From Macrostomum lignano (taxonomy: Eukaryota), in contig NIVC01001853.1 in the NCBI GenBank assembly GCA_002269645.1, positions 62,001 to 126,000 on the forward strand: a stretch of 64,000 bases of DNA, written 5' to 3'. The notes below the pieces were generated by a model. The model was not told the DNA's origin. It worked only from the letters and a program-made list of their open reading frames with translations, and did no database searches. Numbering within the stretch: position 1 is the stretch's first letter; every line of letters starts with the position of its first letter. A program made the translations under genes and the position numbers. This document shows positions 987 through 51,086 of this stretch, in pieces.

Positions 987-1295
987 GTGAGTTCTTGCTT
1001 GGATTTACGCTCGTACTTTTATTTATTCTTTAGATTTTTACGACGCTGCAAAAGATAAAGGAAGTAAACATCGAATCTTTTAGCTTCCAGAGTTTATAAA
1101 CAATGGGCCGTATGCAGAAAGCTCTGTCTAGGGTAGTCCGGTCTTGAAAAGCTAGTCTGGACTTGGATTTGGTATGCAGAAACACAGAGTTAGACCGGTC
1201 TACTATAGCAGAACTAGGGTAGCTGGACCATAGACCATAGACTGAACTACCCAAGTCCGGACTAGCTAGTCTGGACTAAGCTTTCTGCATACGGC

Positions 1296-3829: not shown

Positions 3830-4150
3830 GTACCGTCGTCCAGGTTCGGCAGGCCAGTCCTCAGCACCCAATCCAGTTCCAGCACAAACAGGAAAAGCGC
3901 CAGAGTGTCACCCTGCAGCCCGCCTGACGACGTGCTCCATCTGGCGTCATCACCAAAGCGGTCGCGTCCTGGTACATTGCCAGGGAAAATCAGTTGCTTC
4001 GGTGCATTGTACATGTACGCGCAAAGCACGAGAGGCAGCGCACTGCGAACCAACGAGTCGAAAGCCTTGAGAAGGTCAATAAATATCACCACGAGACTTG
4101 ACTGATGGGTGCGCGCCTTCTCGATAAAGAGGCAGAGGGCTAGAATCAGT
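3830..4150 (-). mobile_element. Non-LTR retrotransposon reverse transcriptase fragment
   Basis: LFIEKAR.HQ..LVVIFIDLLKAFDSL and SGGLQGDTLALFLFVLELDWVLR match LINE RT motifs (FIDxxKAFDS; GVxQGxxLSP-like). Confidence 0.75.
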
Positions 4151-4297
4151 GTCACTGTACCGCAGAATGAGATAAGCAAATATAAAGCAAATAAAGAGAG
4201 GCAACGCGCAAAAGCCGGCTACCAAGACTGAAAACTAATATTAAGCGATCTGGACTTCGACGTGACAACGTAAAAATTTATCATTAAAATGTACCAG

Positions 4298-18312: not shown

Positions 18313-19076
18313 CTTTTCGAAGCACGAGCGCACAGACGGTTCAACGTTGCTGCCACCAAAGCTGGCCGCTTCGCCCAGGTGACGCGGCACCTGCATGCAG
18401 TCGTGCAGCAGCAGGCCCAGACGGCGTTGGTCAAGGACACCTCTCTCGTCAGCCACTGACGCAAACAGGTAGCGATACTTGTCTTCCAGACCGGCCGCCG
18501 ACAGCAGCACCAAGCCGACCTTGAAGCTCAGAGCTCTCATCCGGCCGCTGCGCACGTGATCGTACACATTGAGCAGCCAGTTCAGACTCAAATCGATTGT
18601 CTGCGCCTGCAGTGACGCATCCGCGATGCGAGCTCGCGACCTTGCAAACAGGCTGGCCAGGCAGTTACTCATCTGGCCGACGTCGATCAGACACTCGCCG
18701 CCGCCGCTTGGGCCGCCAGTTGAAGCCGAGGCGATGCCGTGGTCGCGGAATACGTCGGCAGCCGAGGTGAGCGACACCAAGTCCAGGTACAGAGTTCGTT
18801 GAAGACGTTTCAATTTTGCCGCAGTGCGATAAGCCGAATAGCGGATGCTGTTCAACTCGGCCAGGCTGCGAGTCAGCTCCGTCATCACCGGATGGTCCCA
18901 GCTGGTCTCTTGCGTGTCCGAGTTGCGGTAGTATGGCACCTGGTTGCCGCTGGGGTGGAGCAGCCGCTGCCACGGCGCTTGGACGCTGTTGGCTACGGCT
19001 GGGTGCGCGAAGCTGGGACCCGGCAGGGGGCTGGGCAGCTGAGGGACAGCCTGACTCGGCTGCTTGTGCGGCTGTG

Positions 19077-19119
<43 letters not shown>

Positions 19120-19575
19120 ATGATACTGTCGCTGCTGCAGCAGAGGCGACACCGGAGCAATCGCCCGAGCTGGCGACTTCTGCGGCTGCAAGGACGGTGA
19201 CGTGCCCGCGGTGAACGAGGCCGACATGGTGCCGCCGGGACGCCGCAGCGAGGCCAGAAGTCGCGCCCTCGCTCGCATCGCCTCGTGCAGATCCCGGTGC
19301 CGGCTGCGCAGGTCGCTGATCTGCGACACCAGCGTGTGCGTCAGCACCACTTTTGAATCGCGGAAGGCCTGCGACTGGCGCTCCAGCGAGGCGACGAGTT
19401 GATCGAGCGGCGCCATGGACTCCTGGAACTGCTCCAGACGGGACAGCTCGCTTGACAGTTGAGCAACTCCCAGGGTGTCTAACTGGGGCAACGCTTCCAG
19501 CTCGCTTTCGGCTGCCAGCAGGCGATGACTGGTCTGACGGAGCAGCTCCTCGAATGCTGACAGGCTGCGCGTGAC
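18313..19575 (-). CDS. DMD: Dystrophin exon (last spectrin repeat, hinge, WW domain, EF-hand region)
   Basis: VQAPWQR...VPYYRNSDTQETSWDHPVMTEL..SLAELNSIRYSAYRTAAKLKRLQ...NWLLNVYD..RSGRMRALSFKVGL...LEDKYRYLF...GSNVEPSVRSCF. 1263 nt, phase 0->0. Confidence 0.96.
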
Positions 19576-28566: not shown

Positions 28567-29198
28567 CTTCAGCCACGCGTCCTCTCCTCCTCCATCTTCC
28601 GCAGTTCCCGCAGCCGCAGCCGCCAGCCGCTCTTCCCAGCAGGCGGCCCTGGTCTCCAGTTTCGCCACTGTGGCCTCATCACCGGCCGCGGCATCTCCCG
28701 TTTTGCTTGCATCCTCAGCGGCCCCGTTGGCCAGCCGGTCGCAGCCGTCGGGATCGCCGCCGCCGCTCTCTCGTCGACGCCTGGCCGCCGCGGCCGCCAC
28801 CACTGCAGCGTTGGGTTTCGGCGGCGGCTGTGGCGGCGGCTGCGAGTCGTCCTCGAGCGCCGCTCCGTTGCTGCAGGAGGTCGCCGCAGCTCCGCCGCCA
28901 GCTCCTCGAATGCCGGCAAGAGTCGCCGACAGTCGAGCGAGTCGCTGACGCAGCGGTTGAGTGTCCTCTCCGGAGTATTTGGACCTGAGCACTTCGCCGC
29001 TGTCGATGAGACTCTCGAGCTGTCGGACCAGCTCTGTTGGCGGCGGCGCCGGGCCGTCGGCGACTTGACTGAGCAGCGACTCGGTCTGGCGGCACTGCTG
29101 CTCCCACTGGCGCAGCTCGATGGCAGCCTCCTCCATCTCGGCTCTGCGCTGCTGCAGATTTCGTTCGGTCGCTTCGCAACTCGCTACAGTGGCAGCGG
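28567..29198 (-). CDS. DMD: Dystrophin exon (spectrin repeat plus low-complexity linker)
   Basis: RNLQQRRAEMEEAAIELRQWEQQCRQTESLL...LRQRLARL...EDAWLK|gtgagg. Phase-1 acceptors at 29198 or 29183. Confidence 0.85.
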
Positions 29199-31700: not shown

Positions 31701-31756
31701 CCACCCTCCACAGTAACCGTGCCTCAGGCCTCTCAGCCGGCGCCCTCACTCATTAC

Positions 31757-31978
31757 TCCTACACGGTTCGCGAGTCAAAGGGGCGCCGTGATTCAGCAAA
31801 AACTTTCGGTCGACAAACTCGCTCGACTCGTGCATTTCATTGCGCAAAAGAAACGATTTTTTTGAGCTAACCTCGAGCCTCCTTTCTTCACTAATCCCTT
31901 CTTCATCCCGTCTAAATTGCAATGAGATTACATTTAGAATACCCGTCATAGTTGTAGGGTTGGAAAATATTCCCAAAA
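31757..31978 (-). CDS. DMD: Candidate AT-rich dystrophin exon (spectrin repeat junction); 3' boundary between 31750 and 31763
   Basis: ctccag|TT phase-1 acceptor. SNPTTMTGILNVISLQF...RRLEVSSKKSFLLRNEMHESSEF resembles human ENPKELDERVTALKLHY...QQLEKCLKLSRKMRKEMNVLTEW (alignment from memory). Confidence 0.65.
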
Positions 31979-32295
31979 CTGGAGCTCAGGTCACACAGGG
32001 ACAAGCTAAAGATATTTTACTTTATTCGCGTGCGTAATGAAAGAGGTGGATTAATGAATAGAAGTTTTGTTAGTCATTTGCGCCTTGTGTCAAGTCAATT
32101 TGGGATGCTTTTTGTATGGTAGAGTGGATAAAATGCATTGTGAGCCATAATACAAAGCTGATTACAGGGGTCAAGTACTGCGGCGATTGCGTAAGTGGCA
32201 GCCTGACAGCTCTGAGCTAATCTGCGTAGCACCTTCGATTGCGTAATAGCCTTAGGGACTATTTTTGGGGCTATTAATTAAAAGAGGCTAAATGG

Positions 32296-32345
<50 letters not shown>

Positions 32346-32669
32346 TATAGATAGATAGATAGACAGACACTACATGTAACCAGTGTTTATGCACTTTAGG
32401 ATAGAAAAAGTAGACCAAACTGAGTGGCAGCGAAGCAAATCAGTCCTTAATGAATGAGGACTGAGAGATAAATTTAGAGAAACCAGCTCTACAGAGAAGT
32501 TTCTGCACTCAGCTCTCATAGAGAAACCGCAGGGAGGCGGTGGATTGAACAGAGAGTTCGGGCAGGAATTCACTTTGCAACACAACGAAATTGGCTCTGG
32601 TAGCTTTTCTTATGGAAATTAATGAAATCTTTTCTAGCCTACACTTTTGCTCTGCCCATTGTATCTCTC

Positions 32670-33425
32670 TCTGTATACTATCTCCCCCTCTCCGTGTCTA
32701 CTATCTCCCTCTCTCCGTGTCTACTATCTCCCTCTCTCCGTGTCTACTATCTCCCTCTCCGTGTCTACTATCTCCCTCTCTCCGTGTCTACAATCTCCCC
32801 CTCTCCGTGTCTACTATCTCCCTCTCTCCGTGTCTACTATCTCCCTCTCTCCGTGTCTACTATCTCCCTCTCTGTGTCTACTATCTCCCTCTCTCCGAGT
32901 CTACTATCTCACTCTCTTTGTCTACTATCTCCCTCTCTGTGTCTACTATCTCCCTCTCTGTGTCTACTATCTCCCTCTCTGTGTCTACTATCTCCCTCTC
33001 TGTGTCTACTATCTCCCTCTCTGTGTCTACTACCAGTATCTCCCTCTCTGTGTCTACTATCTCCCTCTCTGTGTCTACTATTTCCCTCTCTCTGTGTCTA
33101 CTATCTCCCTCTCTGTGTCTACTATCTCCCTCTCTGTGTCTACTATCTCCCTCTCTGTGTCTACTATCTCCCTCTCTGTGTCTACTATCTCCCTCTCTGT
33201 GTCTACTACCAGTATCTCCCTCTCTGTGTCTACTATCTCCCTCTCTCTGTGTCTACTATCTCCCTCTCTGTGTCTACTATCTCCCTCTCTGTGTCTACTA
33301 TCTCCTTCTCTGTGTCTACTATCTCCCTCTCTTTGTCTACTATCTCCCTCTCTGTGTCTACTATCTCCCTCTCTGTGTCTACTATCTCCCTCTCTGTGTT
33401 TACTACCTCTCTGTGTCTACTATCC
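32670..33425. repeat. 21-bp minisatellite (TCTACTATCTCCCTCTCTGTG)n
   Basis: Visible. Confidence 0.95.
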
Positions 33426-34469
33426 CCTTTTTCTACTATCCTTCACTGTGCTATCTATCCATCTATCTCTTCAAATCTATTCCTCAATAAAGCATTCTGA
33501 TCTGAAGGCACTCACCAATTAAGCCAGAAGAGACACAAGCAACACAGCAGGGCACAAATACTCAAAATATTTCAGACCTCGGGTAGAAGGTGTATCTTTG
33601 TACCTCTGTATTATCTCAACTCAGATCAGTGGATGCCCCAGTGAGGTAAGGAGACGGCGATGGCATTTAACTAAATTATCTGAGGCAGCGCAGTGAAGGA
33701 AAGGCCTTGAAGGAGATGTGCGAAAAAACTTTTTTTGAGGCCGGAGGGAGAGGGGGGAGATGGGAGAGAGGTTGTTGGATGGGCCTATTGGGCCTCGGAT
33801 GTCCAATGTGCCCATGGAGCTCTAGAATAAGGCATCTGGAGTGAAAAAATGATTAAACATTCATGTTTAAAGACGAGTCAGGTGAATTTTTTAATTTTCA
33901 TTTGTATTGTTTGAATTCTAAAAAGTTTAATAATTTTAAACAAAGGGAAAGGCTTGCTAAATTTATTATTTTATGAAGTAAAGTTTCAATTCGGATAGAT
34001 AATGATTTCTCATCCTAGAAACAATCCATGACCTTAGTCGGATTAGGGGAGGAACGAGAGAACAAGAAGGTTGGGGGGGGGGTTGAGGGATGCACGGGAG
34101 AGTAAGGAGGAAAAGCTTGGGCCCACAACTAAAAGGGGAAGAGCCAAGGAGACTGTGAACTAAAAAGATCTGGAGTGGGAAACTTTTTATAATATTGGCG
34201 AGACTGTTGTGATTGTTGAGATCAATCGGGTGCTCAGAGGTTCTCAACCTGTCTAAACCAGCATATTTAGTACCTAAGAAGAGAGAGCAGTAAGGGAAAA
34301 GCACTCAAACTCCAAACTCAATTTCGAATATTTTATATTCTTTTTCAGGGCTAATATGATCGCGAATATTTTAAAGGCAGGTGCTCACCGGTACAAACGC
34401 AAGAGAAAGTGAGAAGTCGATGGGTGAGTGGGGAGCGCGCAAATTTTAAATTGAAAACGTGCGGGAAAG

Positions 34470-35150
34470 AGGAGACAGGAGACAGGAAAGAGCAGAGGGG
34501 AGAGGAGAGAGGAGAGAGAGGACAGGGAGGAGAGGGGAGGACAGAGAAGAGAGGAGAGAGAGGAGAGGAGAGAGGAGAGGGGATAGAGGAGAGGAGAGAG
34601 GATAAAAGAGAAATGAGAGAGGAGAGAAGAGGTGGGAGATGGAAGAGAAAAGACGGTAGAAAGGAGAGAGGAGACGGGAGAAAAGAGAAAAGAGTGAAGA
34701 AAAAAGAGGGGAGATGAGAGAGATGATAGGGGAGAAGAAAAAAGAGAAATGAGAGAGGAGAGAAGAGGTAGGAGAGGGAAGAGAGAAGGGGAAGAAAGGA
34801 GACAGGAGACATGAGAGAGGAAAGAGCAGAGGGGAGAGAAGAGAAGGGAGAGAGGAGAGGAGAGAGAAGAGAGAGGAGAGAAGAGAAGGAAGAGAGGAGA
34901 GGAGAGAGAGAGAGAGAGAGAGAGAGGTGAGAGAGGAGAGGAAAAAAAGAAATAAGAGAGAAGAGGTAGGATAGGGAAGAGAGAAGGGGGAGAAAGGAGA
35001 GGGGATAGAGGAGAGAGGAGAGGAGAGAGAAGAGAGAGAAGAGAATAGAAGGGAGAGAGGAGAGGAGAGAGAGAGGAGAGGAGAGAGAGAGAGAGGACAG
35101 GGAGGAGAGGGGAGGAGAGAGGAGAGAGGAGAGAAGAGAGTGGAAAGAAT
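34470..35150. repeat. GA-rich low-complexity tract
   Basis: Visible. Confidence 0.9.
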
Positions 35151-35679
35151 ATAGGAGAAATAAAGTGAGGATTGGAGTGGTGGATTTGAGGGTCCGAGGC
35201 AGCAAAATCTGCACTCCAGATTTTGGTCCATAAGGGTCTCCTTGAATTATTTTGCCAGTGTGGCTCTCTGCCCTCCGTCCCGACTCCAGCACTGAGCCAG
35301 GGCATGCCCTGTACACTGTGGCTGCCTCCCCCCTCGTGTTTCTTATGCCCCGAGATGGATGGCGATGGGGATGGTTGGAGGCGGGCTGCAGGCTCCGTTA
35401 GAGGTTGTTTCCTCACCGAAGAAGCCATGCGAAGAAACTTTCGCCCAGGAAGCTGGGCTGCTCCCGCCTCATCAGGGGTTGGGGGGAAGGGTAGATGAGG
35501 CTACATGTATAGAATGCTTAATGATGGCCTGTTTAACTTGAGCACTCGTGAATTGTAGAAAAAATGAACGAATACGGTTCAGAACGTTCCTATTCTTTTG
35601 AACCTGTCTATTGATCCAAGCAGGTTTCTGAAGGTTGTGGTGCCGAAAATGAAATCAATATGAGGAACACAAAGCTTTC

Positions 35680-36415
35680 AAATTCACCCCGAAACTCCAC
35701 CTGAATTCACCAAAACTCCAGCTGAATTCCCCCCGAAACTCCACCTGAATTCCCCCCGAAACTCCATCTGAATTCCCCCCGAAACTCCATCTGAATTCCC
35801 CCCGAAACTCCACCTGAATTCCCCTGAAACTCCACCTGAATTCCCCCCGAAACTCCACCTGAATTCCCCCCGAAACTCCACCTGAATTCCCCCGAAACTC
35901 CACCTGAATTCCCCCCGAAACTCCACCTGAATTCCCCCGAAACTCCACCTGAATTCCCCCCGAAACTCCACCTGAATTCCCCCGAAACTCCACCTGAATT
36001 TCCCCGAAACTCCACGGGAATTCCCCGCAAACTTTACCTGAATTCTCTCCGAAACTCCACCTTAATCCACCCGAAACTTCACCTGAGTTCCCTGGAAATT
36101 TCGTCTGAATTCCCCGCAAAACTTCACCGGAGTCCACCCCCCCCCCAAACTCCACCAGAATTCCCCCAAACTCCACCTGAATTTCCCCGAAACTCCACGG
36201 GAATTCCCCGCAAACTTTACCTGAATTCTCTCCGAAACTCCACCTTAATCCACCCGAAACTTCACCTGAGTTCCCTGGAAATTTCGTCTGAATTCCCCGC
36301 AAAACTTCACCGGAGTCCACCCCCCCCCCAAACTCCACCAGAATTCCCCCCAAACTCAACCAGAATTCCCCCCAAACTATATCCGAATTACCGCCGAAAC
36401 TCCACCTATATTTCC
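35680..36415. repeat. 22-23-bp minisatellite (GAAACTCCACCTGAATTCCCCCC)n with a 183-bp internal duplication
   Basis: Visible; the block at 36001 recurs at 36184. Confidence 0.93.
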
Positions 36416-36754
36416 CTTGAAAATTTATCTCAAGCTAGAATAGGCCATTTATAATAAAAGCCGCTATTTGACCATATTTTGGAATTTACACAATACACAA
36501 CCTGAATTGAACTCAAAGTTGGGAATAATCTAACCACAATAAGAATCAATGATCCTTGAAAAATGTTTAATAAATATTTTCTTTGAAGTGGCTCTTAAAC
36601 AAATTTTCGAGTCAAAGCTTTCATTGTTGCTAGCGAATTTCAAGAGATTTAACCAGCTTCCTGTTTTGAGTGGAAAACGAAAAAATAACCGCAATATATT
36701 GCTTAGCTTACTACTCACTTAAGTAGACAAACAAGACCAAATTATTATTATTCT

Positions 36755-37370
36755 TTACTAAATAGTCCCAGATCTTTTCACTAAACAGTCCCAGATTTCT
36801 ATACTAAATAGTCCCAGATATCTATACTAAATAGTCCCAGATATCTATACTAAATAGTCCCAGATATTTTCACTAAACAGTCCCAGATTTCTATACTAAA
36901 TAGTCCCAGATTTCATTACTAAATAGTCCCAGATTTCTCAACTAAATAGTCCCAGATATCTATACTAAATAGTCCCAGATATCTATACTAAATAGTCCCA
37001 GATATCTATACTAAATAGTCCCAGATATCTATACTAAATAGTCCCAGATTTCTATACTAAATAGTCCCAGATTTCTATACTAAATAGTCCCAGATATCTA
37101 TACTAAATAGTCCCAGATATCTATACTAAATAGTCCCAGATTTCTATACTAAATAGTCCCAGATATCTATACTAAATAGTCCCAGATATCTATACTAAAT
37201 AGTCCCAGATATCTATACTAAATAGTCCCAGATTTCTATACTAAATAGTCCCAGATTTCTATACTAAATAGTCCCAGATATCTATACTAAATAGTCCCAG
37301 ATTCTCTACTAAATAGTCCTAGATTTCTCAACGAAATAGTCCCATATTTTTCCTCTAAATAGTCCCAGAC
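36755..37370. repeat. 23-bp minisatellite (CTAAATAGTCCCAGATATCTATA)n
   Basis: Visible. Confidence 0.95.
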
Positions 37371-37959
37371 TTATTCACTGAATAGTCACACATTTATCTT
37401 CTGAGCAGTCCCTGACTTTTATCCAGAGCAGCCTCTGCACACTGCCAAGTACACCCATATTACTACAATACTAAGTCTATACTTATAACTGGAATTCCGC
37501 CAGCTCAAAATGAGCATCTCCCAGAGACCCAAGTAGTTCGCCTTCTAAGAAAGCAGGAAGCCCAGAGCCAAACCTATAACTAACTCCTCGTATTAAAGTA
37601 CAGAGACCGAAAGCCTACCAGCCACTGAGATCGGGGATTACAATCAATCATTTCCCTGCTCTGCTTCGGTATAAACTTTTAACAGCATGCATGCTAGCTA
37701 TATAGGATAAGCCCAAGTCCTGACAATATATCCCAATTCCCAGGAAAACAGCTAGCTTAGCACAGGTATTTTTTACCTTAACTTCCTTCCTTCCCTTTTT
37801 CCTAACTTCATTTTCTGAATTTTTCTTACTTGGCTTTTAGCCGACAATAGCCGTGTGCGCTGAAGCTTGGGGAGATGAGGCATCGATCTGCCGTTCCCAT
37901 CCGCCAGCTCTTAAGGTGACAAAATCGACAGCTTGCATGCGCCTGGCAACTAATCTACT

Positions 37960-38752
37960 GTCTCCCCGTCTCCCTGTGTCTCCCTGTGTCTCACTGTATC
38001 TCCCTGTGTCTCTCTGTGTCTCCCTGTGTCTCCCTGTGTCTCCCTGTGTCTCCCTGTGTCTCACTGTGTCTCCCTGTGTCTCTCTGTGTCTCCCTGTGTC
38101 TCCCTGTGTCTCCCTGTGTCTCCCTGTGTCTCCCTGTGTCTCCCTGTGTCTCCCTGTGTCTCCCTGTGTCTCCCTGTGTCTCCCTGTGTCTCCCTGTGTC
38201 TCCCTGTGTCTCCCTGTGTCTCCCTGTGTCTTCCTGTGTCTCCCTGTGTCTCCCTGTGTCTCCCTGTGTCTCGCTGTGTCTCCCTGTGTCTCCCTGTGTC
38301 TCCCTGTGTCTCCCTGTGTCTCCCTGTGTCTCCCTGTGTCTCCCTGTGTCTCCCTGTGTCTCCCTGTGTCTCCCTGTGTCTCCCTGTGTCTCCCAGTCTC
38401 TCCCTGCCTCTCCCAGTCTCTCCCTGTCTCCCTGTGTCTCCCTGTGTCTCCCTGTCTCTCCCTGTGTCTCCCTGTGTCTCCCTGTGTCTCCCTGTGTCTC
38501 CCTGTGTCTCCATGTGTCTCCATGTGTCTCCATGTGTCTCCCTGTCTCTCCCTGTGTCTCCCTGTGTCTCCATGTGTCTCCCTGTGTCTCCCTGTGTCTC
38601 CATGTGTCTCCATGTGTCTCCATGTGTCTCCCTGTCTCTCCCTGTGTCTCCCTGTGTCTCCCTGTCTCTCCCTGTGTCTCCCTGTGTCTCCCTGTGTCTC
38701 CCTGTGTCTCCCTGTGTCTCCCTGTGTCTCCCTGTCTCTCCCTGTGTCTCCC
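37960..38752. repeat. 10-bp minisatellite (TCCCTGTGTC)n
   Basis: Visible. Confidence 0.96.
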
Positions 38753-39385
38753 AATGGACCTCAATCTACAAAGATATAATATAGAATGTATAAATGTATA
38801 AAATTAAATTTTCAAAGACAGACTAAGCTTCAGTTTCAATGACACTCTTAACCTTAGCTGGGAAAAAAGTACAAATCTAAATTTATCTTACATAAAATTA
38901 GGATTTTATAAAGTTTCATATAAATAAACTTTATATGATATTCTATCAAGAGAAGTGGAGCATTAAAGTTTTCCATTGGTTATAAAGTGCCTCTCAGCTA
39001 GAAGTATTGAACTCCTGCCTCACTATACATATGAATAACACTAAGTACATGCGCTTCGACCCATCTGCATGCAAATTTCCTTCACAACAAACCAATTGAA
39101 TTCCCCATTATACGGAGGGGATTTGAATATTGGCCCATCTTGATGCATTCAATTCTGCGATGCACCGGCACGGATGCCACTTGGCTTGGCAACGGAATTT
39201 GGGCTAATTAATGCTCCCAGCCTGGCAACCCCCAGCTCAAATCCCCTGCTAATTGGCAGCAAACTGCCTTGAGACTGCATTGAGAATCGGTGTGTGATTT
39301 TGCTGGGCGGATGAAGTTACTTAGCTTCACTGGCTGCTTTGACACTGGGTTCACTGTGAGAAAATAGAAAGATTTTAAAACGGAA

Positions 39386-39759
<374 letters not shown>

Positions 39760-39809
39760 CCCAAAAATCTACTCTAAAGCTACCCTAAACCAGAAGCGCC
39801 CATACTGAC

Positions 39810-41376
39810 CATCTGATGAGTTTCCAGTCTCTTCATTCTTTGAATGAAAACCTCCATCCTCATTGTAAACAAGCGAGTCGGAGTTCTTCCTCTCAGAGTT
39901 GGTTTCCTTGACAACTGCTGCTGGAGTTCCCGCAAAGACTAACGGCTTGGAGACCGGTCTGGGCGGTCGGGGCGGCGGCGGCAGAGGACGCTGCTGAGGC
40001 GGTTTTTTGGGCTGCGTTTGAGGTTTCTGAGTCTGTGGTTCAGGTTGCTGAGTCGATAGTTGAGGTTGCTGAGTCTGTGGTTCAGGTTGCTGAGTCGATA
40101 GTTGAGGTTGCTGAGTCTGTGGTTCAGGTTGCTGAGTCGATAGTTGAGGTTGCTGAGTCTGTGGTTCAGGTTGCTGAGTCGAAGGTTGAGGTTGCTGAGT
40201 CTGTTGTTCAGGTTGCTGAGTCGAAGTTTGAGGTTGCTGAGTCTGTTGCTCAGGTTTTTGAGTCGAAGGTTGAGGCTGCTGATTTGGTGTTCGAAGTTGT
40301 TGAGTCGATTTTTGAGGTTGCTGAGCCGACAATTGAGGTTGCTGATTCGGTGGAAATTGCTGATTTCGTAGAGTTTGCTGATTTGTTGTTTTAAATTGCT
40401 GAGTCGATGATTCAGGTTGCTGAGACGATGGTTCAGATTGCTGAGTCGATGGTTCAGATTGCTGAGTCGATGGTTCAGATTGCTGAGTCGATGGTTCAGA
40501 TCGCTGAACAGGAGATTGCGGTAGCGAAGTCGGAGGAGATTGCTGAGTGGGTGTTTGAAGTTTCTGACTCGGAGACTGAGTTTTTTGAGCTGGAGACTGA
40601 CTTAGCTGAGTCATTTGCTCCAGTTTCTGAGTCGGAGGATGTTGAAGTGGCTGAGTTGTGCATTCCTGTTGCTGAGTCGATGGTAACGATTGATTCGCAG
40701 GCTGAACCTGGTGCTCATGCTTCTGGCTTTGAGCCTCTAATTTTTGAAGTTGCTGTGGCGGCGGCAGCTGAGGCGGCGGCGGCAGCTGAGGCGGCGGTGG
40801 CAGCGGAGGCGGCGCAGAGTGCAGCGGTCTTCGACTTGTCTCTCTCAAAGAAGAGCCTCGCTGAGACGGTTGTCTGGCTGGCTGCTGCCTGCGGGACAGG
40901 TGCGCCGGACTCGGGGTCGGGCTGCTGCCAATGCTGGCGGATGCTGAGGCGGCGGAGGCGGCGGCGGCGGCGGCAGCGGCGGCAGCGGCGGATGCAGCGA
41001 CGCTGGCTGCGGCGCCGTCTCGCAGCCGGTCCTCCAGGCTGCGCAGCTTGCCAGCCTGTCTGGCGTTCCGCAGGCTGGGAATCTCGAACGGGATTCGACT
41101 GTCGGCGTTGCGGACTTCGTCGTCCTCAGATTCGTCGTAGTCTTCATCGTCACTGTTGAGATCCCAGTCGCTGAGCACCACCGAGGCGCGCTTGGCGATC
41201 CAGCCGGTGATGCCGCCGAGGTCTGGCAGCGGTTCGCTGGCGCCCCCGTCGCCACCGCTCCCGGCGATGCCATCTTCGCCATCTTCCGCTGTGTCATCGA
41301 ACAGGTTCAAGGACGCCGACGAGAGCGCCTTGGTGGCGCGGAACACCTGGCCGAATTTGTTCCAGTAGCCAGACAT
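39810..41376 (-). CDS. Putative alternative first coding exon of a short dystrophin isoform (522-aa unique acidic/Ala/Pro/Gln-rich N-terminus)
   Basis: aaaaATG start (MSGYWNKFGQVFRATKAL...), an uninterrupted 1567-nt frame, and a strong G|gtcagt phase-1 donor. That phase matches both the 47370 donor and the 31978 acceptor. No spectrin similarity. Confidence 0.65.
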
Positions 41377-42014
41377 TTTTGTGTCCGTCCGACTTGTCCG
41401 GTTACAGACTGTCCGAGCGAGGGCCCTTGGGCTGCTTTTTAACTTTCCTCCCTCCTGCTTTCGGCTAGCAACTAAAGCTCGCGGGACAGATCGGCGATTG
41501 GAGGAGGCGGAGACGAATCTGGAAATCTCCACGCCGGTCCCAGTTGCCAGCTGCAGTGTGTCATGTTTAACCCCAGCTGCGACAAGTGGCTGGACATCGG
41601 GTCTATAGGAAGTTTCGCGTGTATATGCATATATGCTTTGTGCTATATGCCTGTTCGTGCATATTTTTTCGTTAAAAACAGTTTGCCCTGTTGGCAACAA
41701 AAAAGACGTGAAGAAGATGAGAGAGCCGGAGAGCCAAGAAGGTTGCTTAGAGGCTGTTGTGCATATAGTGAGTACACACAGATTTCAAGTGACCCAACCA
41801 CACTGCTTCAGCGATTCCCTAGGAGCCTCTCTCGTTCCCCCCTCTCTCTCTCTCTCCTCTTCTCCTCTCCGCTCATCATCTCTTCTAAACCCCCTCGCTT
41901 CATTTCAGTAGCTTCTGGAAAATCAGTTTACCCAGTTATGATATCATGGGTGTGGGTAGATGACCGAGCCTGCATGTGCTGACTGTGTGTGCGTGACACT
42001 GTCTGACTGTCTGT

Positions 42015-42415
42015 CTCCCGGTGTCTCCTAGTCTCTCCCTGTCTCTCCCAGTCTCTCCCAGTCTCTCCCTGTGTCTCCCAGTCTCTCCCAGTCTCTCCCA
42101 GTCTCTCCCAGTCTCTCCCTGTGTCTCCCAGTCTCTCCCAGTCTCTCCCAGTCTCTCCCTGTCTCTCCCAGTCTCTCCCTGTGTCTCCCTGTGTCTCCCA
42201 GTCTCTCCCTGTCTCTCCCTGTCTCTCCCAGTCTCTCCCTGTCTCTCCCTGTGTCTCCCAGTCTCTCCCTGTGTCTCCCTGTCTCTCCCAGTCTCTCCCA
42301 GTCTCTCCCAGTCTCTCCCAGTCTCTCCCAGTCTCTCCCAGTCTCTCCCAGTCTCTCCCAGTCTCTCCCAGTCTCTCCCAGTCTCTCCCAGTCTCTCCCA
42401 GTCCCTCCCAGTCTC
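42015..42415. repeat. 10-bp minisatellite (GTCTCTCCCA)n
   Basis: Visible. Confidence 0.95.
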
Positions 42416-43234
42416 TTCTTGTCTCTCTTCCCTCATGCATGCTAGGGAAGAAAAAATCGTGGTCGACCAGCCAGATGTTGATAAAGCGCCTTATCTACTT
42501 TTTTAGATCATTGTCTCATAGGTAATCCTACAATCCCTGAACTACTGGTAAATAACTCTGGATGCAAACTATAGCAATCTAGCGATCTCAGCTAGACTCA
42601 TACTCCTATTGCACTAGCAGCTAAGCCGAAAATCGTCACCGCAAATCGTAACAATAATATTAGATTGGACACGCACTTTATAGCGTAGGCAGGCCACAGG
42701 CTCTACTAGCATTTCCCTGCTCATACAAAAAAACTAGAAACTATATCGGTTAACTACACACAGGGATCAGCTCCCTTACCCTCCGGCTCGGCTCTGAGAA
42801 GCAAAAGAAAATTATTCTGTCTATCGATTATCGAACCTTGTTGAGATTCCCGCCACTGCTGCTCTGCTGAAACCTCTCTACTGTTTTTTGCTTTTACATT
42901 GCATATAATTATCAAAAGAATGACAGCAAGCTAAAACGGATAAAAGGCTAACATCGCGGGCAGGAAAACCTACTAATGCTTGAGTCCAAAATGTATCAAA
43001 GATAGCTGGACACAGAATTTGTCTGTCTGGCTGTTTCTTTCATGCATCAGTTGAGTTTTTGGCTTTTAGATGGCGGTTAAAAGGATTCTGATTGGTTCAA
43101 ACAGACGCTGCTGAGAGCAGTCTAGAAAATCTTTGAACACATCCCAGCATGTACATCAGAAGCCTAACTGGCTGATTGTACAGTGCTTCAAGTCATGTAC
43201 GAGCTTAGGAGAAGACCCCGTCAACCCTATTTCC

Positions 43235-43830
43235 TTGACCTTGAAAATCAACCACCTCACCTCGTGCGACCTTGAAAACGGCGTACACAAATTTCCTGAT
43301 AACATTTACAGACTGCGTAGAAATCTCCACTGAATGTACACTTCACCAACCTCACTGCATGACCTTGAAAACAGCGTGCATGCAATTCTGTTCATTAACA
43401 GGCTACCGAGAAATCTCCACACACTGTACATTTTACCCACCTCACTCCACGTGACCTTGAAAACAGAGTGCATGCAATTCAGTTCATTAACAGGCTACCG
43501 TGAAATCTCCACACACTGTACATTTTACCCACCTCACTCCACGTGACCTTGAAAACAGTGTACAGACAATTCAGTTCATTAACAGGCTACCGTGAAATCT
43601 CCACACACTGTACATTTTACCCACCTCACTCCATGACCTTGAAAACAGTGTACAGACAATTCAGTTCATTAACAGGCTGAAGGGAAATCTCCACACACTG
43701 TACACTTCACCAACCTCACTCCAGTGACCTTGAAAACAGCGTACACGCTATTCAGTTTATTAACTGGCTACCGGGAAATCTCCACACACTTAACACTTCA
43801 CCCACCTTACTCCATGACCTTGAAAACAAC
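43235..43830. repeat. ~91-bp tandem repeat, ~6.5 copies
   Basis: GACCTTGAAAA recurs at ~43267, 43360, 43452, 43544, 43634, 43725 and 43815. Confidence 0.9.
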
Positions 43831-44709
43831 CAACCAAAGAAGCTGAAGTATCATGCGTCGAGCCTCTAAAAGGAAAAGTACAAAAAGAAAGTGACGATCC
43901 AATCCGTCTCAGTCACTCTCTGCACCAGGCCAGAGCGGCAGCCTCAGCTTCGGACCCCGAGATTCATATCTGCCTAGAAAATTGGAAATGATCGAATGAA
44001 TGCCAGGCCCAGATCTCGGCATGGCCTGATCACGCGGTGGAGATTGGGCCGAGCGGGGATAATGGAATGCATAGCGAGAAAGAGAACAGAACGACAGATT
44101 GCAGTTTTTATGCGCGAGACTCCCCCATGCTCCTCAGTTCAGCCATTAATTCCTTCATCTTCCCCTTCCCGCTCAGAAGATGAGACAGCCGAGAAGTTTA
44201 GAAATGCTACCAACGGCCTCTGAGCAGCCGTTCTCAAAAGTGAAAATCTCCCCAGAAATTCTCCCCCCTTCATTTTCATCCGGGGGGGGGGGGCTGATCG
44301 TTGAGCAAATCCCAGTCCTGAGGCATTATCCATCTCAGAGCTCGGCTCTCCTGATATAGTAATCAGCTCAACGATGTCCAATGTTAAAGTAATGTTCTTT
44401 CTCCGGGCACCGCTTCGGTCTTGTTATCTTAGCGATTATGGTTTTAGAGAGGAGTTCAGTTTTGACAGGATGAGCGCTGCCCATCGATGCTTGCTTGAGC
44501 AATATTTAACTGCTCAATATTCTGTCGGCTCCTCGGGCGGGACCGGGGACCAGCAGCTCAGATTCTGTCAATTTGTCAATGCTCATTTTTTAAATTCAAG
44601 TTCGCGTATTACGTGATGTGCGTCTGAAAAATATTGAGTGAATTTTTATGTAGAAAAACTACTCGGGATTTGAATTTGCGTGACGGTGAGGTCCGGCTGT
44701 AGAAATGGC

Positions 44710-44836
44710 TAACTGACTAACTAAGTAACTAACTAACTAACTAACTAACTAGCTAACTAACTAACTAACTAGCTAACTAACTAGCTAACTAACTAACTAA
44801 CTAGCTAACTAACTAGCTAACTAACTAACTAACTAG

Positions 44837-44872
<36 letters not shown>

Positions 44873-44873
44873 A

Positions 44874-44908
<35 letters not shown>

Positions 44909-44912
44909 ACTG

Positions 44913-44949
<37 letters not shown>

Positions 44950-44957
44950 ACTGACTG

Positions 44958-45022
<65 letters not shown>

Positions 45023-45026
45023 ACTG

Positions 45027-45059
<33 letters not shown>

Positions 45060-45067
45060 ACTGACTG

Positions 45068-45098
<31 letters not shown>

Positions 45099-45124
45099 GA
45101 CTAACTAACTAGCTAACTAACTAG

Positions 45125-45178
<54 letters not shown>

Positions 45179-45192
45179 GACTAACTAACTAG

Positions 45193-45235
<43 letters not shown>

Positions 45236-45236
45236 G

Positions 45237-45279
<43 letters not shown>

Positions 45280-45356
45280 GCTAACTAACTAACTAACTAG
45301 CTAACTAACTAGCTAACTAACTAACTGACTAACTAACTAGCTAACTAACTAACTAG

Positions 45357-45391
<35 letters not shown>

Positions 45392-45500
45392 GCTAACTAA
45401 CTAACTAACTAGCTAACTAACTAGCTAACTAACTCACTAACTGACGAACTAACTAACTAGCTAACTAACTAGCTAACTAACTAACTGACTAACTAACTAG

Positions 45501-45543
<43 letters not shown>

Positions 45544-45628
45544 GCTAAATAACTAACTCACTAACTGACGAACTAACTAACTAGCTAACTAACTAGCTAA
45601 CTAACTAACTAACTAGCTAACTAACTAG

Positions 45629-45667
<39 letters not shown>

Positions 45668-45732
45668 GCTAACTAACTAACTAACTAGCTAACTAACTAG
45701 CTAACTAACTAACTAACTAGCTAACTAACTAG

Positions 45733-45796
<64 letters not shown>

Positions 45797-45797
45797 A

Positions 45798-45832
<35 letters not shown>

Positions 45833-45845
45833 ACTGACTAACTAG

Positions 45846-45885
<40 letters not shown>

Positions 45886-45893
45886 ACTGACTG

Positions 45894-45966
<73 letters not shown>

Positions 45967-45970
45967 ACTG

Positions 45971-46003
<33 letters not shown>

Positions 46004-46011
46004 ACTGACTG

Positions 46012-46104
<93 letters not shown>

Positions 46105-46185
46105 ATAACTAAACTGACTAACTAACTAACTAACTAACTAACTATCTAACTAAGTAACGAACTAACCAAGTAACTAAATAATTAA
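44710..46185. repeat. (CTAA)n microsatellite, ~1.5 kb
   Basis: Visible. Confidence 0.98.
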
Positions 46186-46849
46186 CTCTTTCAGAAATGC
46201 CTGCGCCAACGAATCTGAAAAATTCCGCAGAAATTTAAAAGAAAGTTCGCTTGCAGCTTCACAGCCTCATCAGTCTTTAAAAGTATTCCCAAAGGATTCA
46301 AACGAGGAGGCGAGACAGAGAATGCCAATGGACTCGGCTAAATTACTCTTGGGTTACTCAGCCTGGATAGGTCCCGGGGTCGACTCAAACTGATGAAAGT
46401 TGCAGCCCCAACTCCCCAGCATTACTGGATTAGTTACCATCCCACTGTTGAAGCGGATTAGAGTCGTCGATAGTAAAAGTACATAGCCAATTTTTTTCTA
46501 TATCTCAAAGCGTCCAAGAGCTCCCGAGAATTGCATATCAAATTTTCTTTGCCCTTCTCTATGCCCTTTGCGTGGTGGAGTCCTGCTCAAAGTGTAATAC
46601 CGCACTGGGCGGTTCTCAAAGCAAACGAGAAGGTAACAGTGCAGTGGATTATGATTAAAAGTCAATGGAGAATTTCCCTTCTTGCTTCCTCACAGAGTAA
46701 TACACAGAGTATTTCCAACCTACACAACAGCGTCGCAAGCACAATGTACCACTGTGTGGGGCTTATAGCTTTAAATGCAGATTCTCCACTTGAATTGAAT
46801 GAACTGGTTACTTCTGAACACTCAGGTGCAAACACATGACACACTCGTG

Positions 46850-47345
46850 TCTAACAGGTGTAACTGTTCTCTGTCTAACGGGTAGCACACTCGTCGTGTC
46901 TAACAAGTGACACACTCCTGTCTAACAGGTGACACACTCCTGTCTAACAGGTAAGACACTCCTGTCTAACAGGTAACACACTCCTGTCTAACAGGTGACA
47001 AACTCCTGTCTAACAGGTGACACACTAATCGTGTCTAACAGGTGACACACTCCCGTCTAACAGGTGACACACACTCCTATCTAACAGGTGACACACACTC
47101 CTGTCTAACAGGTGACACACTCCTGTCTAACAGGTGACTCACTCCTGTCTAACAGGTGACACACTTCTGTCTAACAGGTGACACACTTCTGTCTAACAGG
47201 TGACACACTTCTGTCAAACAGGTGACACACTTCTGTCTAACAGGTGACACACTCCTGTCTAACAGGTGACACACTCCTGTCTAACAGGTGACACACTCCT
47301 GTCTAACAGGTGACACACTCCTGTCTAACAGGTGACACTCCTGTC
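46850..47345. repeat. 22-bp minisatellite (TCTAACAGGTGACACACTCCTG)n
   Basis: Visible. Confidence 0.95.
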
Positions 47346-47369
47346 TAACATTCAGCCACACCCTCTCAC

Positions 47370-47538
47370 CCAGGGCGGCATTAGCAGACTCGGGTTTCCG
47401 TCTCAGCGTTGCTTTCACCTCGCGCAGACTCTGCCTGTGACGGGTGTCCAGCTCAGTCAGCAATGATTTCGCTTTAGCCAGAGCTTCGGCAGGCGAGAGG
47501 CTGTCGAGACTGCCCACCGATTGTTGGGATAACTCGGA
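47370..47538 (-). CDS. DMD: Dystrophin exon (spectrin repeat)
   Basis: catcag|TCC...AEALAKAKSLLTELDTRHRQSLREVK...NAAL G|gtgaga. Phase 0->1. Confidence 0.8.
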
Positions 47539-50710: not shown

Positions 50711-51086
50711 CTCATCCAGCCGATCCCGGATCTCCTCAGCCTCCTCAACATCCGCTTTGCCGGCGGAATCCTTCCCGTTGACCTCCGCAGAAGCGACTGC
50801 GCCATTCCCGCAGCCTCCAGCAGCCGCAGCCTCATCTTGAAGAGCCTTCAACCGAATTCCCTCAGCTTCCAGGCCGATCTGCAGAGCTTCGAATCGAGCT
50901 TGCACTTTTCTCAAGCCGGGCAAATCGTCCCAGTGGGTCAGGCCTGACAGCCAGGTCTCGGCCTCTGCCGCTGCACCGCCGGCGTCGCGGAGCCAGGTGA
51001 GACAGGCATCCAGAGATGCTGCCAGCTTGGCGGTCTTCAGTGGCTGACTCTGGCGCTCCACCTGCTGTTCCTGTGATGCATCGGTG
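50711..51086 (-). CDS. DMD: Dystrophin exon (spectrin repeat); most 5' exon I can identify in the window
   Basis: ctgcag|C acceptor. LAASLDACLTWL...DDLPGLRKVQARFEALQIGLE...IRDRLDE|gtgaat. Phase 2->0. Confidence 0.85.

What the first reader, a model, noticed from the sequence alone, without database searches (positions are those of the whole stretch)
39810..41376. Putative internal-promoter dystrophin isoform with a novel 522-aa disordered N-terminus
An ATG-initiated, stop-free 1567-nt exon lies on the dystrophin strand inside the 31978-47370 intron. Its strong gtcagt donor is phase 1, like the upstream spectrin exon donor (47370), so either can splice to the phase-1 acceptor at 31978. The peptide has an amphipathic start (MSGYWNKFGQVFRATKAL), an acidic patch (DWDLNSDDEDYDESEDDE), polyAla, PPPQL repeats, 7-aa STQQPEP/QTQQPQL repeats and a class-I SH3-ligand-like RPLPPPP. 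Established: vertebrate (Dp260/140/116/71) and Drosophila (Dp186) dystrophins use internal first exons. Inferred: an independent, much longer version replacing the actin-binding N-terminus.
Basis: partly seen in the sequence, partly recalled or inferred. Interest (0 to 1): 0.75.

Follow-up and report, generated by a model that had tools for sequence, protein, structure and literature searches.

The report
Alternative first exon of flatworm dystrophin
Inside a large intron of a flatworm dystrophin gene lies a real, species-conserved coding exon that most likely starts a shorter dystrophin lacking the actin-binding head, an arrangement already known from flies and vertebrates.

Summary
The exon exists as described: ATG at 41376, no stop for 522 codons, G|GTCAGT at 39810, phase 1, minus strand, inside a dystrophin-family gene (WW, EF-hand and ZZ domains downstream). 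It is not a chance ORF. Residues 1-121 have the frame-specific codon usage and GC3 (0.80) of the dystrophin exons. Among 1.84 billion proteins, the only hit is a Macrostomum lignano protein (E 2.8e-9). Two M. lignano models share the start motif (MSGYWNKF / MASFWGNKF), the GW..KRAS..DWD and FEIPSL.NARQ.G.LR motifs, the polyAla and TSRRPL. Both then run straight into the orthologue of the next downstream spectrin exon, 29198-28567.

Three corrections apply:
- The partner acceptor is 29198, not 31978. The '31978 exon' has no coding signature, no phase-1 donor and no M. lignano counterpart.
- The donor is mid-strength, not strong.
- About 250 of the 522 residues are a lineage-specific in-frame 21-bp minisatellite, absent in M. 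lignano.

Drosophila Dp186, Dp205 and Dp117 also carry unique N-terminal domains, so this is a new member of a known kind.

No transcript data could be consulted. Promoter use, the exact donor and the identity of the upstream exons remain inferred.

The parts
39810..41376 (-). Candidate alternative first coding exon (522 codons + 1 base, phase 1)
   Evidence: Sequence read. Best donor in the ORF. Codon signature. M. lignano homologues.
41014..41376 (-). Conserved N-terminal module, aa 1-121: start motif MSGYWNKF..TKALSSASL, SEPLPDLGGITGWIAKRASVVLSDWD, acidic patch, IPFEIPSLRNARQAGKLRSL
   Evidence: Codon LLR +0.26 in frame against -0.37 and -0.27 out of frame; GC3 0.80. phmmer E 2.8e-9, 56% identity to P0121. 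Start motif shared with P0122. AF2 helices at aa 3-23 and 54-69.
40732..41013 (-). Ala/Pro-rich segment, aa 122-215, with conserved polyAla, RRQQ and S.RE..TSRRPL, and PPPQL repeats
   Evidence: Alignments A1/A2. 18-bp repeat at 40757-40814.
40024..40686 (-). Q/P/T/S-rich heptad repeats (aa 231-451), encoded by a degenerate 21/42-bp minisatellite; lineage-specific, in frame
   Evidence: TRF rows at 40018-40507. Unit table: 22 heptads and two 6-aa units; differences by codon position 42/22/18. Absent from P0121/P0122. GC3 0.27-0.38.
39811..39990 (-). C-terminal tail of the exon, aa 463-522, with RPLPPPPRPPRP (SH3-ligand-like)
   Evidence: Weak alignment of ..NEDGG..NEETGNSSD to P0121 ..LEDNCGSDEG just before the spectrin part. 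No clear codon signature.
39804..39809 (-). Splice donor GTCAGT (phase 1)
   Evidence: PWM 6.4, the best GT in the ORF and within the range of model donors. C at +3 is non-consensus.
28567..29198 (-). First shared exon (Ee): acceptor ..ccgccacccgcag|CC needs 2 bases (phase 1). Encodes a spectrin-like repeat starting at helix A, plus a G/A/P-rich insert.
   Evidence: P0121 aa 271-367 maps to 29196-28906. Smith-Waterman z = 10.3, 0 of 300 shuffles.
47370..47538 (-). Upstream exon Ed, whose phase-1 donor (G|GTGAGA) is the long-isoform partner of acceptor 29198
   Evidence: LLR 0.28, frame-specific.
50711..51070 (-). Upstream spectrin-like exon Ea. Further exons: Eb 49614-49322 and Ec 48552-48254. 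The Eb/Ec phase is unresolved.
   Evidence: Coding signature. Weak Pfam Spectrin, E 0.066. No PDB or Pfam support when concatenated.
41377..41784 (-). Stop-free stretch upstream of the ATG (136 codons, no in-frame ATG), with an acceptor-like site at 41687 in phase with donor 47370. Presumed 5' UTR or outron.
   Evidence: LLR about -0.5 in all frames; GC3 0.49. Open in only 22 of 5000 shuffles. Acceptor score 3.9.
31750..31978 (-).
   Evidence: LLR -0.53, GC 0.44. No phase-1 donor. No match to P0121/P0122.
18313..19575 (-). Shared exon with spectrin end, WW, EF-hand_2 and start of EF-hand_3. With 21057-20392, 15443-14833 (ZZ), 12734-12575 and 9930-9100 it completes an in-frame model of 1910 aa.
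   Evidence: Pfam. Homologues at 51-55% identity. In-frame concatenation.

Best explanation
The 41376-39810 segment is an alternative first coding exon of a dystrophin-family gene in a flatworm related to Macrostomum lignano.

How it most likely works:
- Translation starts at the ATG at 41376.
- The exon's phase-1 donor at 39810 is spliced across a 10.6-kb intron to the phase-1 acceptor at 29198. This is the same acceptor that the long isoform reaches from the donor at 47370.
- The product is about 1,900 aa if 9930-9100 is the last exon. It lacks the actin-binding head and most of the rod. It keeps about four spectrin-like repeats plus the WW, EF-hand, ZZ and coiled-coil dystroglycan/syntrophin-binding end.

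The product carries a largely disordered N-terminal region instead of the head. The conserved part of that region, about 215 aa, holds short helical motifs, an acidic patch, polyAla and a basic RRQQ..TSRRPL stretch. These motifs presumably tether or regulate the short isoform. The following ~250 aa of Q/P/T-rich heptads arose by in-frame expansion of a 21-bp minisatellite in this lineage only.

Shown: the coding nature of the exon, its conservation, and its linkage to the downstream exon in a relative's protein models.
Inferred: the start site, the use of the 39810 donor, the source of the 5' end (own promoter or SL trans-splicing), and any function of the motifs.
For: - Dystrophin identity of the host gene: Pfam WW, EF-hand_2, EF-hand_3, ZZ and Spectrin; 161 homologues, the best at 51-55% identity.
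- Frame-specific codon usage and GC3 0.80 start exactly at the ATG and last to about aa 215. The values match the leave-one-out values of the ten dystrophin exons.
- phmmer of aa 1-121 against 1.84e9 proteins gives a single hit, M. lignano A0A1I8I9D8, E 2.8e-9. A second model, A0A1I8JQK2, contains MASFWGNKF..SKAFSSASL, matching the proposed start.
- Both M. lignano models continue into a helical region that matches exon 29198-28567 specifically: z = 10.3, 0 of 300 shuffles, against z <= 3.6 for the other spectrin exons. The tblastn match begins at 29196, two bases from the acceptor.
- The donor at 39810 is the best GT in the ORF and falls in the range of the gene's other donors.
- The phases fit, and the concatenated model is open for 1910 codons.
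- The junction falls at the start of helix A of a spectrin-like repeat (read directly).
- No AATAAA or ATTAAA lies within 1 kb after the stop at 39769.
- Precedent: the short Drosophila isoforms have unique N-terminal domains and 4, 2 or 0 repeats (PMC2840664).
Against: - No transcript evidence could be consulted.
- The M. lignano entries are fragmentary gene models of unknown evidential basis; one has frameshift-like stretches. They could embody the same in-silico splice inference.
- They were not found in any genomic record available here.
- The donor has C at +3, unlike the GT[G/A]AG typical of Macrostomum (PMC8629364).
- The repeat part and the tail lack a codon-usage signature. Repeat variants show no third-position excess (42/22/18), so translation of aa 216-522 rests on the open frame, three in-frame 3-nt indels and the lack of a better donor.
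- The frame is open for 136 codons upstream of the ATG, seen in 22 of 5000 shuffles. This is unexplained.
- The upstream exons have no homology support as dystrophin.
Confidence: 0.65

Rival explanations
1. The segment is an internal (cassette) exon, or the reading frame starts further upstream. The phase-1 donor at 47370, or an unseen 5' exon, splices to the acceptor at 41687. An in-frame insert of 626 codons then sits in the rod of the long dystrophin, and the ATG at 41376 is an internal Met.
For: - Acceptor 41687 (ttttttgttgccaacag|GG, score 3.9) needs 2 bases and so fits donor 47370.
- The frame is stop-free for 136 codons upstream of the ATG, seen in only 22 of 5000 dinucleotide shuffles. 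The other two frames have 3 and 7 stops.
- P0122 also has an in-frame extension before its MASFW.
Against: - The upstream stretch has non-coding codon usage: LLR -0.5 overall and -0.9 to -1.5 at 41694-41604; GC3 0.49. The signature switches on at the ATG.
- The Met is conserved at the head of the conserved motif in M. lignano. The P0122 extension (MSGPLRLTAQ9) is unrelated to the window's upstream peptide.
- The ATG has a good context.
Confidence: 0.12
2. It is a stand-alone gene nested in the dystrophin intron. The transcript reads through the GTCAGT to the TAG at 39769 (535 aa), and the link to dystrophin exons in the M. lignano models is a gene-prediction artefact.
For: - The stop lies only 14 codons past the putative donor.
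- The donor is non-consensus at +3.
- The M. lignano models are fragmentary and of unknown basis.
- Nothing in the peptide is dystrophin-like.
Against: - Both M. lignano models join the homologous peptide to the orthologue of the very next exon, through a linker of unrelated sequence that is still open and in phase.
- The same gene order and strand occur in both species.
- No AATAAA or ATTAAA lies within 1 kb 3' of the stop, which is followed at once by a (GTCT)93 microsatellite.
- The 13 post-donor codons score as non-coding (-1.36).
Confidence: 0.1
3. The first exon is real but shorter. It ends at an earlier phase-1 donor, for example 40602 (CTAA|GTCAGT), and the heptad-repeat block is an intronic minisatellite that merely happens to be open in frame.
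For: - aa 216-522 have no coding signature: GC3 0.27-0.38, and the in-frame LLR is no better than the next frame.
- Repeat variants show no third-position excess.
- M. lignano lacks the repeats.
- Minisatellites with open frames are common in this window.
- Phase-1 GTs exist at 40602 (score 3.8), 41154 and 41256.
Against: - 39810 is clearly the best donor (6.4 against <= 3.8).
- The frame has 0 stops over 307 codons, while the neighbouring frame, which is also stop-free in the consensus unit, has stops.
- All length changes between units are multiples of 3.
- M. lignano also has a ~90-aa non-conserved linker at this position, and its end (..LEDNCGSDEG) aligns weakly with the window's tail.
Confidence: 0.08
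4. It is a chance or decayed ORF in GC-rich, repeat-rich intronic DNA and is not expressed.
For: - Long repeat-derived ORFs are frequent in this window.
- Shuffles of aa 1-215 are open in 3.6% of trials.
- No Pfam family matches, and the whole-peptide search found nothing.
Against: - Motif-level conservation at the protein level with M. lignano: E 2.8e-9 against 1.84e9 proteins, and E 3.4e-13 within the window with composition correction.
- Frame-specific codon usage.
Confidence: 0.03

Closest known systems
Drosophila melanogaster Dp186, and Dp205/Dp117 (short dystrophin isoforms from internal promoters)
   Same: They lack the actin-binding domain, carry a unique N-terminal domain conserved only among close relatives, and are joined to a few spectrin repeats (4, 2, 0) plus the WW/ZZ/coiled-coil end (PMC2840664). 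The model here keeps about four spectrin-like repeats.
   Different: There is no sequence similarity: the all-library phmmer search found only M. lignano. Here half of the unique region is a young heptad minisatellite. Promoter use is unproven, and SL trans-splicing is an alternative source of the 5' end in flatworms.
Vertebrate Dp260/Dp140/Dp116/Dp71
   Same: Alternative first exons lie inside introns of the long gene and are spliced in frame to shared downstream exons (PMC2840664).
   Different: From my own knowledge, unverified here: vertebrate unique first exons encode only a few residues or are non-coding. Here the unique part is 522 aa (about 270 aa without the repeats).
Macrostomum lignano UniProt A0A1I8I9D8 ('BMERB domain-containing protein', 373 aa fragment) and A0A1I8JQK2 ('Uncharacterized protein', 477 aa)
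   Same: They are homologous along the N-terminal module: start motif, GW..KRAS..DWD, FEIPSL.NARQ, polyAla, RRQQ, TSRRPL. They are followed by the orthologue of exon 29198-28567.
   Different: Overall identity is only about 43-56%. They have no heptad-repeat block, but a ~90-aa acidic/Ala-rich linker instead. They are fragments not annotated as dystrophin and do not reach the WW/EF/ZZ region.

Membership tests
Dystrophin/utrophin/DRP family gene (host gene) | WW domain followed by the dystrophin-type EF-hand pair and a ZZ zinc finger, preceded by spectrin repeats | tested here: met
   Pfam EF-hand_2 1.8e-31, EF-hand_3 1.9e-19, ZZ 2.7e-10, WW 5.5e-4, Spectrin 3.3e-5. Best homologues are dystrophins at 51-55% identity.
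Short dystrophin isoform from an alternative first exon (Dp-type) | The unique exon lies within an intron of the long-isoform gene, on the same strand | tested here: inconclusive
   Same strand. It is flanked 5' by four exons with a coding signature, spectrin-like 'WL' helix-A motifs and a phase-1 donor that fits acceptor 29198. These exons have no significant Pfam or PDB match. No CH-domain exon lies in the window.
Short dystrophin isoform from an alternative first exon (Dp-type) | The exon supplies its own start codon and splices in frame to shared downstream exons | tested here: met
   In silico only. ATG with A at -3. Phase-1 donor at 39810 with phase-1 acceptor at 29198. The concatenated model has 1910 codons without a stop. 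M. lignano models show the same join.
Short dystrophin isoform from an alternative first exon (Dp-type) | Own transcription start (internal promoter), shown by transcripts | not testable with these tools
   No RNA data for the source species. No exact-protein records found.
Short dystrophin isoform from an alternative first exon (Dp-type) | Lacks the calponin-homology actin-binding domain | tested here: met
   No Pfam family in the 522 aa. AF2 mean pLDDT 52, with only three short helices.
Homologue of the Drosophila Dp186/Dp205/Dp117 N-terminal domains | Detectable sequence similarity of the unique N-terminal region | tested here: not met
   phmmer of aa 1-121 against 1.84e9 representatives gave one hit, from M. 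lignano. The whole-peptide search gave nothing. There was no hit among 120 dystrophin-family proteins.
Macrostomum N-terminal module (A0A1I8I9D8 / A0A1I8JQK2) | Collinear motifs M-[SA]-x-[YF]-W-x-NKF, SEPLPDLGGI.GW..KRAS.VLS.DWD, FEIPSL.NARQ.G.LR, polyAla, RRQQ, TSRRPL, followed by the Ee-type spectrin repeat | tested here: met

The most novel reading that the evidence does not exclude
A macrostomid-specific N-terminal module replaces the actin-binding head of dystrophin and gives the dystroglycan-binding core a new anchoring partner. The module consists of two short conserved helices, an acidic patch and a basic stretch. In this species it has in addition captured a 21-bp minisatellite of the kind that fills the surrounding introns. 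That repeat is now translated as ~250 aa of Q/P/T-rich heptads, a recent, length-variable, possibly condensate-forming spacer on a membrane-cytoskeleton scaffold.
Probability: 0.4. Interest if true: 0.45.

Novelty: new member of a known kind. Interest (0 to 1): 0.3.

Why it matters
Short dystrophins made from alternative first exons are central to the nervous-system roles of the gene in vertebrates and flies. Little appears to be known about them in lophotrochozoans: a full-text search for Macrostomum plus dystrophin found nothing relevant.

This locus gives three things:
- A concrete, testable short isoform in an experimentally tractable flatworm genus.
- A set of short conserved motifs that could reveal what replaces actin binding.
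- A clean case of an intron-type minisatellite sitting in frame in a coding exon.

It also links two mislabelled or uncharacterised M. lignano entries to dystrophin-family sequence. None of this changes the general picture of the gene family.

Tried and rejected
- Whole 522-aa search in the 5.8-billion-protein index: nothing, probably because Q/P-rich words swamped the candidate list. The N-terminal 121 aa alone found the M. lignano hit.
- Pfam on the peptide and on P0121/P0122: nothing. The UniProt label 'BMERB domain' on P0121 was not reproduced by Pfam.
- phmmer of the peptide against 120 dystrophin-family proteins, including short Aplysia and insect isoforms: no hit.
- The 31978 exon: rejected.
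- Genomic context of P0121/P0122, and exact-protein look-ups of four window ORFs to identify the species or find transcripts: nothing on record.
- PDB and Pfam searches of the concatenated upstream exons, to prove that they are dystrophin rod: no significant hit. An AF2 single-sequence model of exon Ea was helical but of low confidence (pLDDT 59), so no fold search was run.
- Codon-position test on repeat variants: no sign of purifying selection.
- Trans-splice acceptor motif [T/C]TNCAG (PMC8629364): by eye, none of the AGs upstream of the ATG fits it.
- CpG observed/expected is high (0.97-1.15) over 40501-41500 but was not pursued.
- Species identity could not be fixed. It is either a relative of M. 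lignano or an old paralogue within it.
Full report
**What is in the sequence**

On the minus strand an ATG at 41376 opens a frame that runs without a stop to a TAG at 39771-39769. At 39810 the sequence reads ..CAGATG|GTCAGT, so an exon 41376-39810 is 1567 nt: 522 codons plus one base, phase 1. The frame is also open upstream to 41784, with no in-frame ATG there.

- the MSGYWNKF.. start;
- the acidic patch at aa 70-87;
- polyAla and PPPQL repeats;
- RPLPPPP at aa 463;
- 22 heptads plus two 6-residue units.

The heptads come from a 21/42-bp tandem repeat at 40018-40507 and its degenerate 5' continuation.

**The host gene**

The window is metazoan DNA with very many minisatellites (74 TRF rows). 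The minus strand carries a dystrophin-family gene:
- WW, EF-hand_2 and EF-hand_3 in 19575-18313;
- the end of EF-hand_3 and ZZ in 15443-14833;
- Spectrin in 21057-20392.

The best database relatives of the WW/EF exon are dystrophins of annelids, molluscs, insects, corals and vertebrates, at only 51-55% identity.

I scored splice sites with a simple donor position-weight matrix (PWM) and an acceptor score. A phase-consistent chain is 47370 (phase 1) -> 29198-28567 -> 21057-20392 -> 19575-18313 -> 15443-14833 -> 12734-12575 -> 9930-... Four more exons with a coding signature lie 5' of it, between 51070 and 47370. The join between 49322 and 48552 does not fit in phase, so that part of the model is incomplete.

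- The segment 31978-31750 has non-coding codon usage: a codon-usage log-likelihood ratio (LLR, per codon) of -0.53, GC3 0.47 and GC 0.44.
- It has no phase-1 donor that could lead on to 29198.
- It has no counterpart in the related proteins.

The acceptor at 29198 (accctccgcccgccacccgcag|CC) needs two bases. It therefore accepts both the 47370 donor and the 39810 donor.

**Chance ORF or coding?**

Openness by itself proves little here.
- Minisatellites with periods divisible by three give ORFs of 250-530 codons elsewhere in the window.
- Dinucleotide shuffles of aa 1-215 stay open in 3.6% of trials.

Two other lines of evidence settle the question.

First, I built a codon model from the ten dystrophin exons. 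In leave-one-out tests they score +0.11 to +0.38 per codon in frame and negative out of frame, with GC3 0.62-0.77. Against this model:
- aa 1-121 of the candidate score +0.26 in frame, against -0.37 and -0.27 out of frame, with GC3 0.80;
- the stretch upstream of the ATG scores about -0.5 in every frame, with GC3 0.49;
- in sliding windows the signal switches on at the ATG and lasts to about aa 215.

Second, phmmer of aa 1-121 against 1.84 billion representative proteins gave exactly one hit: P0121, E 2.8e-9, 56% identity over aa 21-115. P0121 is UniProt A0A1I8I9D8 of the flatworm Macrostomum lignano. A profile search then found a second M. lignano model, P0122 = A0A1I8JQK2.

**What the M. lignano proteins show**

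The following elements are collinear between the window and M. lignano:
- MSGYWNKFGQVFRATKALSSASL aligns with MASFWGNKFDQATSKAFSSASL;
- SEPLPDLGGITGWIAKRASVVLSDWD aligns with SEPLPDLGGIAGWFSKRASSVLSGDWD;
- an acidic stretch;
- IPFEIPSLRNARQAGKLRSL aligns with ITFEIPSLQNARQSGRLRQL;
- polyAla, RRQQ and S.RE..TSRRPL.

After a ~90-aa linker of unrelated sequence, both models run into a helical region (..ELLQWEEHCR..). In the window this region matches exon 29198-28567 and no other spectrin-like exon:
- the tblastn match starts at 29196;
- Smith-Waterman score 102 against 38 +/- 6 for shuffles (z = 10.3, 0 of 300);
- the next best exon has z = 3.6.

P0122 continues into that exon's PPPxPPPKP stretch.

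So in a relative, the homologous N-terminal peptide is joined to the orthologue of the very exon that the phase argument predicts. The joint falls at the start of helix A of a spectrin-like repeat, which is a structurally sensible place.

Caveats:
- Both entries are fragments.
- P0122 has stretches that look like frameshifts of P0121.
- I could not recover their genomic loci.
- From memory, this accession block derives from the first M. lignano assembly's gene models. I could not verify how they were built, so the join may itself be a prediction.

**The repeat block and the tail**

aa 216-522 have no codon-usage signature (GC3 0.27-0.38). Differences between repeat units fall 42/22/18 on codon positions 1/2/3, so there is no sign of purifying selection on the residues. 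M. lignano has no such block.

Four points favour translation of this part:
- the frame has no stop over 307 codons, whereas the neighbouring frame, also stop-free in the consensus unit, does;
- all unit-length changes are multiples of three;
- 39810 is the best donor in the whole ORF (PWM 6.4 against <= 3.8 for other phase-1 GTs; the gene's other donors score 4.0-12.3);
- the tail aligns weakly with the end of the M. lignano linker.

I read the block as a lineage-specific, in-frame expansion of the kind of minisatellite that fills the neighbouring introns. A shorter exon ending at 40602 remains possible.

**Start of the message**

The conserved Met, the codon-usage switch and the ACAAAAATGT context favour initiation at 41376. 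Four out-of-frame ATGs lie between 41687 and 41555. A scanning ribosome would therefore be better served by a 5' end downstream of about 41555.

In M. lignano, 30% of genes receive a 35-nt spliced leader, and cis donors are mostly GT[G/A]AG (PMC8629364). M. cliftonense and M. hystrix show about 20% trans-splicing (PMC10468722). The 5' end could therefore come from an internal promoter or from trans-splicing. Neither could be tested.

One observation remains unexplained. The frame is stop-free for 136 codons upstream of the ATG, seen in 22 of 5000 shuffles. The acceptor-like site at 41687 is also in phase with the 47370 donor. A cassette-exon reading is therefore kept as a rival, although the upstream stretch looks non-coding.

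**Nature of the N-terminal region**

- No Pfam family matches.
- AF2 with the three-sequence alignment gives mean pLDDT 52. The only helices are at aa 3-23, 54-69 and 110-146 (polyAla). The first two coincide with the conserved motifs.
- The helical hydrophobic moment of the start is moderate, at 0.44.
- aa 1-121 carry a net charge of -13.

'Largely disordered, with conserved short motifs' is a fair description. Any binding function is inference.

**Comparison with what is known**

Vertebrate DMD has four internal promoters. The Drosophila gene has six promoters. Its short products Dp186, Dp205 and Dp117 lack the actin-binding domain, carry unique N-terminal domains conserved among Drosophila species, and keep 4, 2 and 0 spectrin repeats plus the WW/ZZ/coiled-coil end (PMC2840664).

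The model here is about 1,910 aa, with about four spectrin-like repeats by motif counting. It is closest in architecture to Dp186. There is no sequence similarity between the N-termini, so the module arose independently and is, as far as the databases show, restricted to macrostomid flatworms. A long unique N-terminus is therefore not unprecedented.

**Verdict**

My confidence in the alternative-first-exon reading is about 0.65. It is a new member of a known kind and of moderate-to-low general interest.

Noticed in passing
window 41377-41784 (-): The frame of the exon stays stop-free for 136 codons upstream of the ATG, although codon usage there is non-coding. This occurs in only 22 of 5000 dinucleotide shuffles. 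An acceptor-like site at 41687 is in phase with the donor at 47370.
   Followed up: partly
window 37968-38752 and 42014-42427: Related 10-bp minisatellites (GTCTCCCTGT and TCTCCCAGTC) flank the exon on both sides. A (GTCT)93 microsatellite at 39388-39759 starts about 10 nt after the TAG at 39769. Tandem repeats fill much of every intron in the window (74 TRF rows).
   Followed up: no
window 3-1030 (+): Ankyrin-repeat coding sequence (Pfam Ank_2 6e-10, Ank_4 2e-8), partly built from a 99-bp tandem repeat at 21-389.
   Followed up: partly
window 1483-2150 (+): A THAP zinc-finger domain split over two overlapping open frames (Pfam THAP 7e-6 and 1.5e-6). This suggests a short intron or a frameshift, possibly a domesticated or decayed transposase gene.
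   Followed up: partly
window 5527-6964 (+): A gene on the opposite strand just 3' of dystrophin, with a Mab-21 C-terminal (HhH/H2TH-like) domain (Pfam 2e-6) and a long coding-like exon at 6119-6943.
   Followed up: partly
window 3817-4218 (-): An open frame containing ..FIDLLKAFDSL.., which recalls a reverse-transcriptase motif. There was no Pfam hit at E <= 0.01.
   Followed up: partly
window 49322 / 48552 (-): The strongest donor of the upstream exon (CAG|GTGAGT, phase 2) does not fit the phase of the best acceptor of the next exon (needs 2 bases). A small exon or a different site is missing from the upstream gene model.
   Followed up: no
P0121 (UniProt A0A1I8I9D8) and P0122 (A0A1I8JQK2), Macrostomum lignano: These entries are labelled 'BMERB domain-containing' and 'Uncharacterized'. 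They appear to be fragments of a short dystrophin-family isoform. P0122 differs from P0121 by stretches that look like frameshifts.
   Followed up: partly
window 40501-41500: CpG observed/expected is 0.97-1.15 over the conserved part of the exon, against 0.0-0.6 in the flanking repeats.
   Followed up: no
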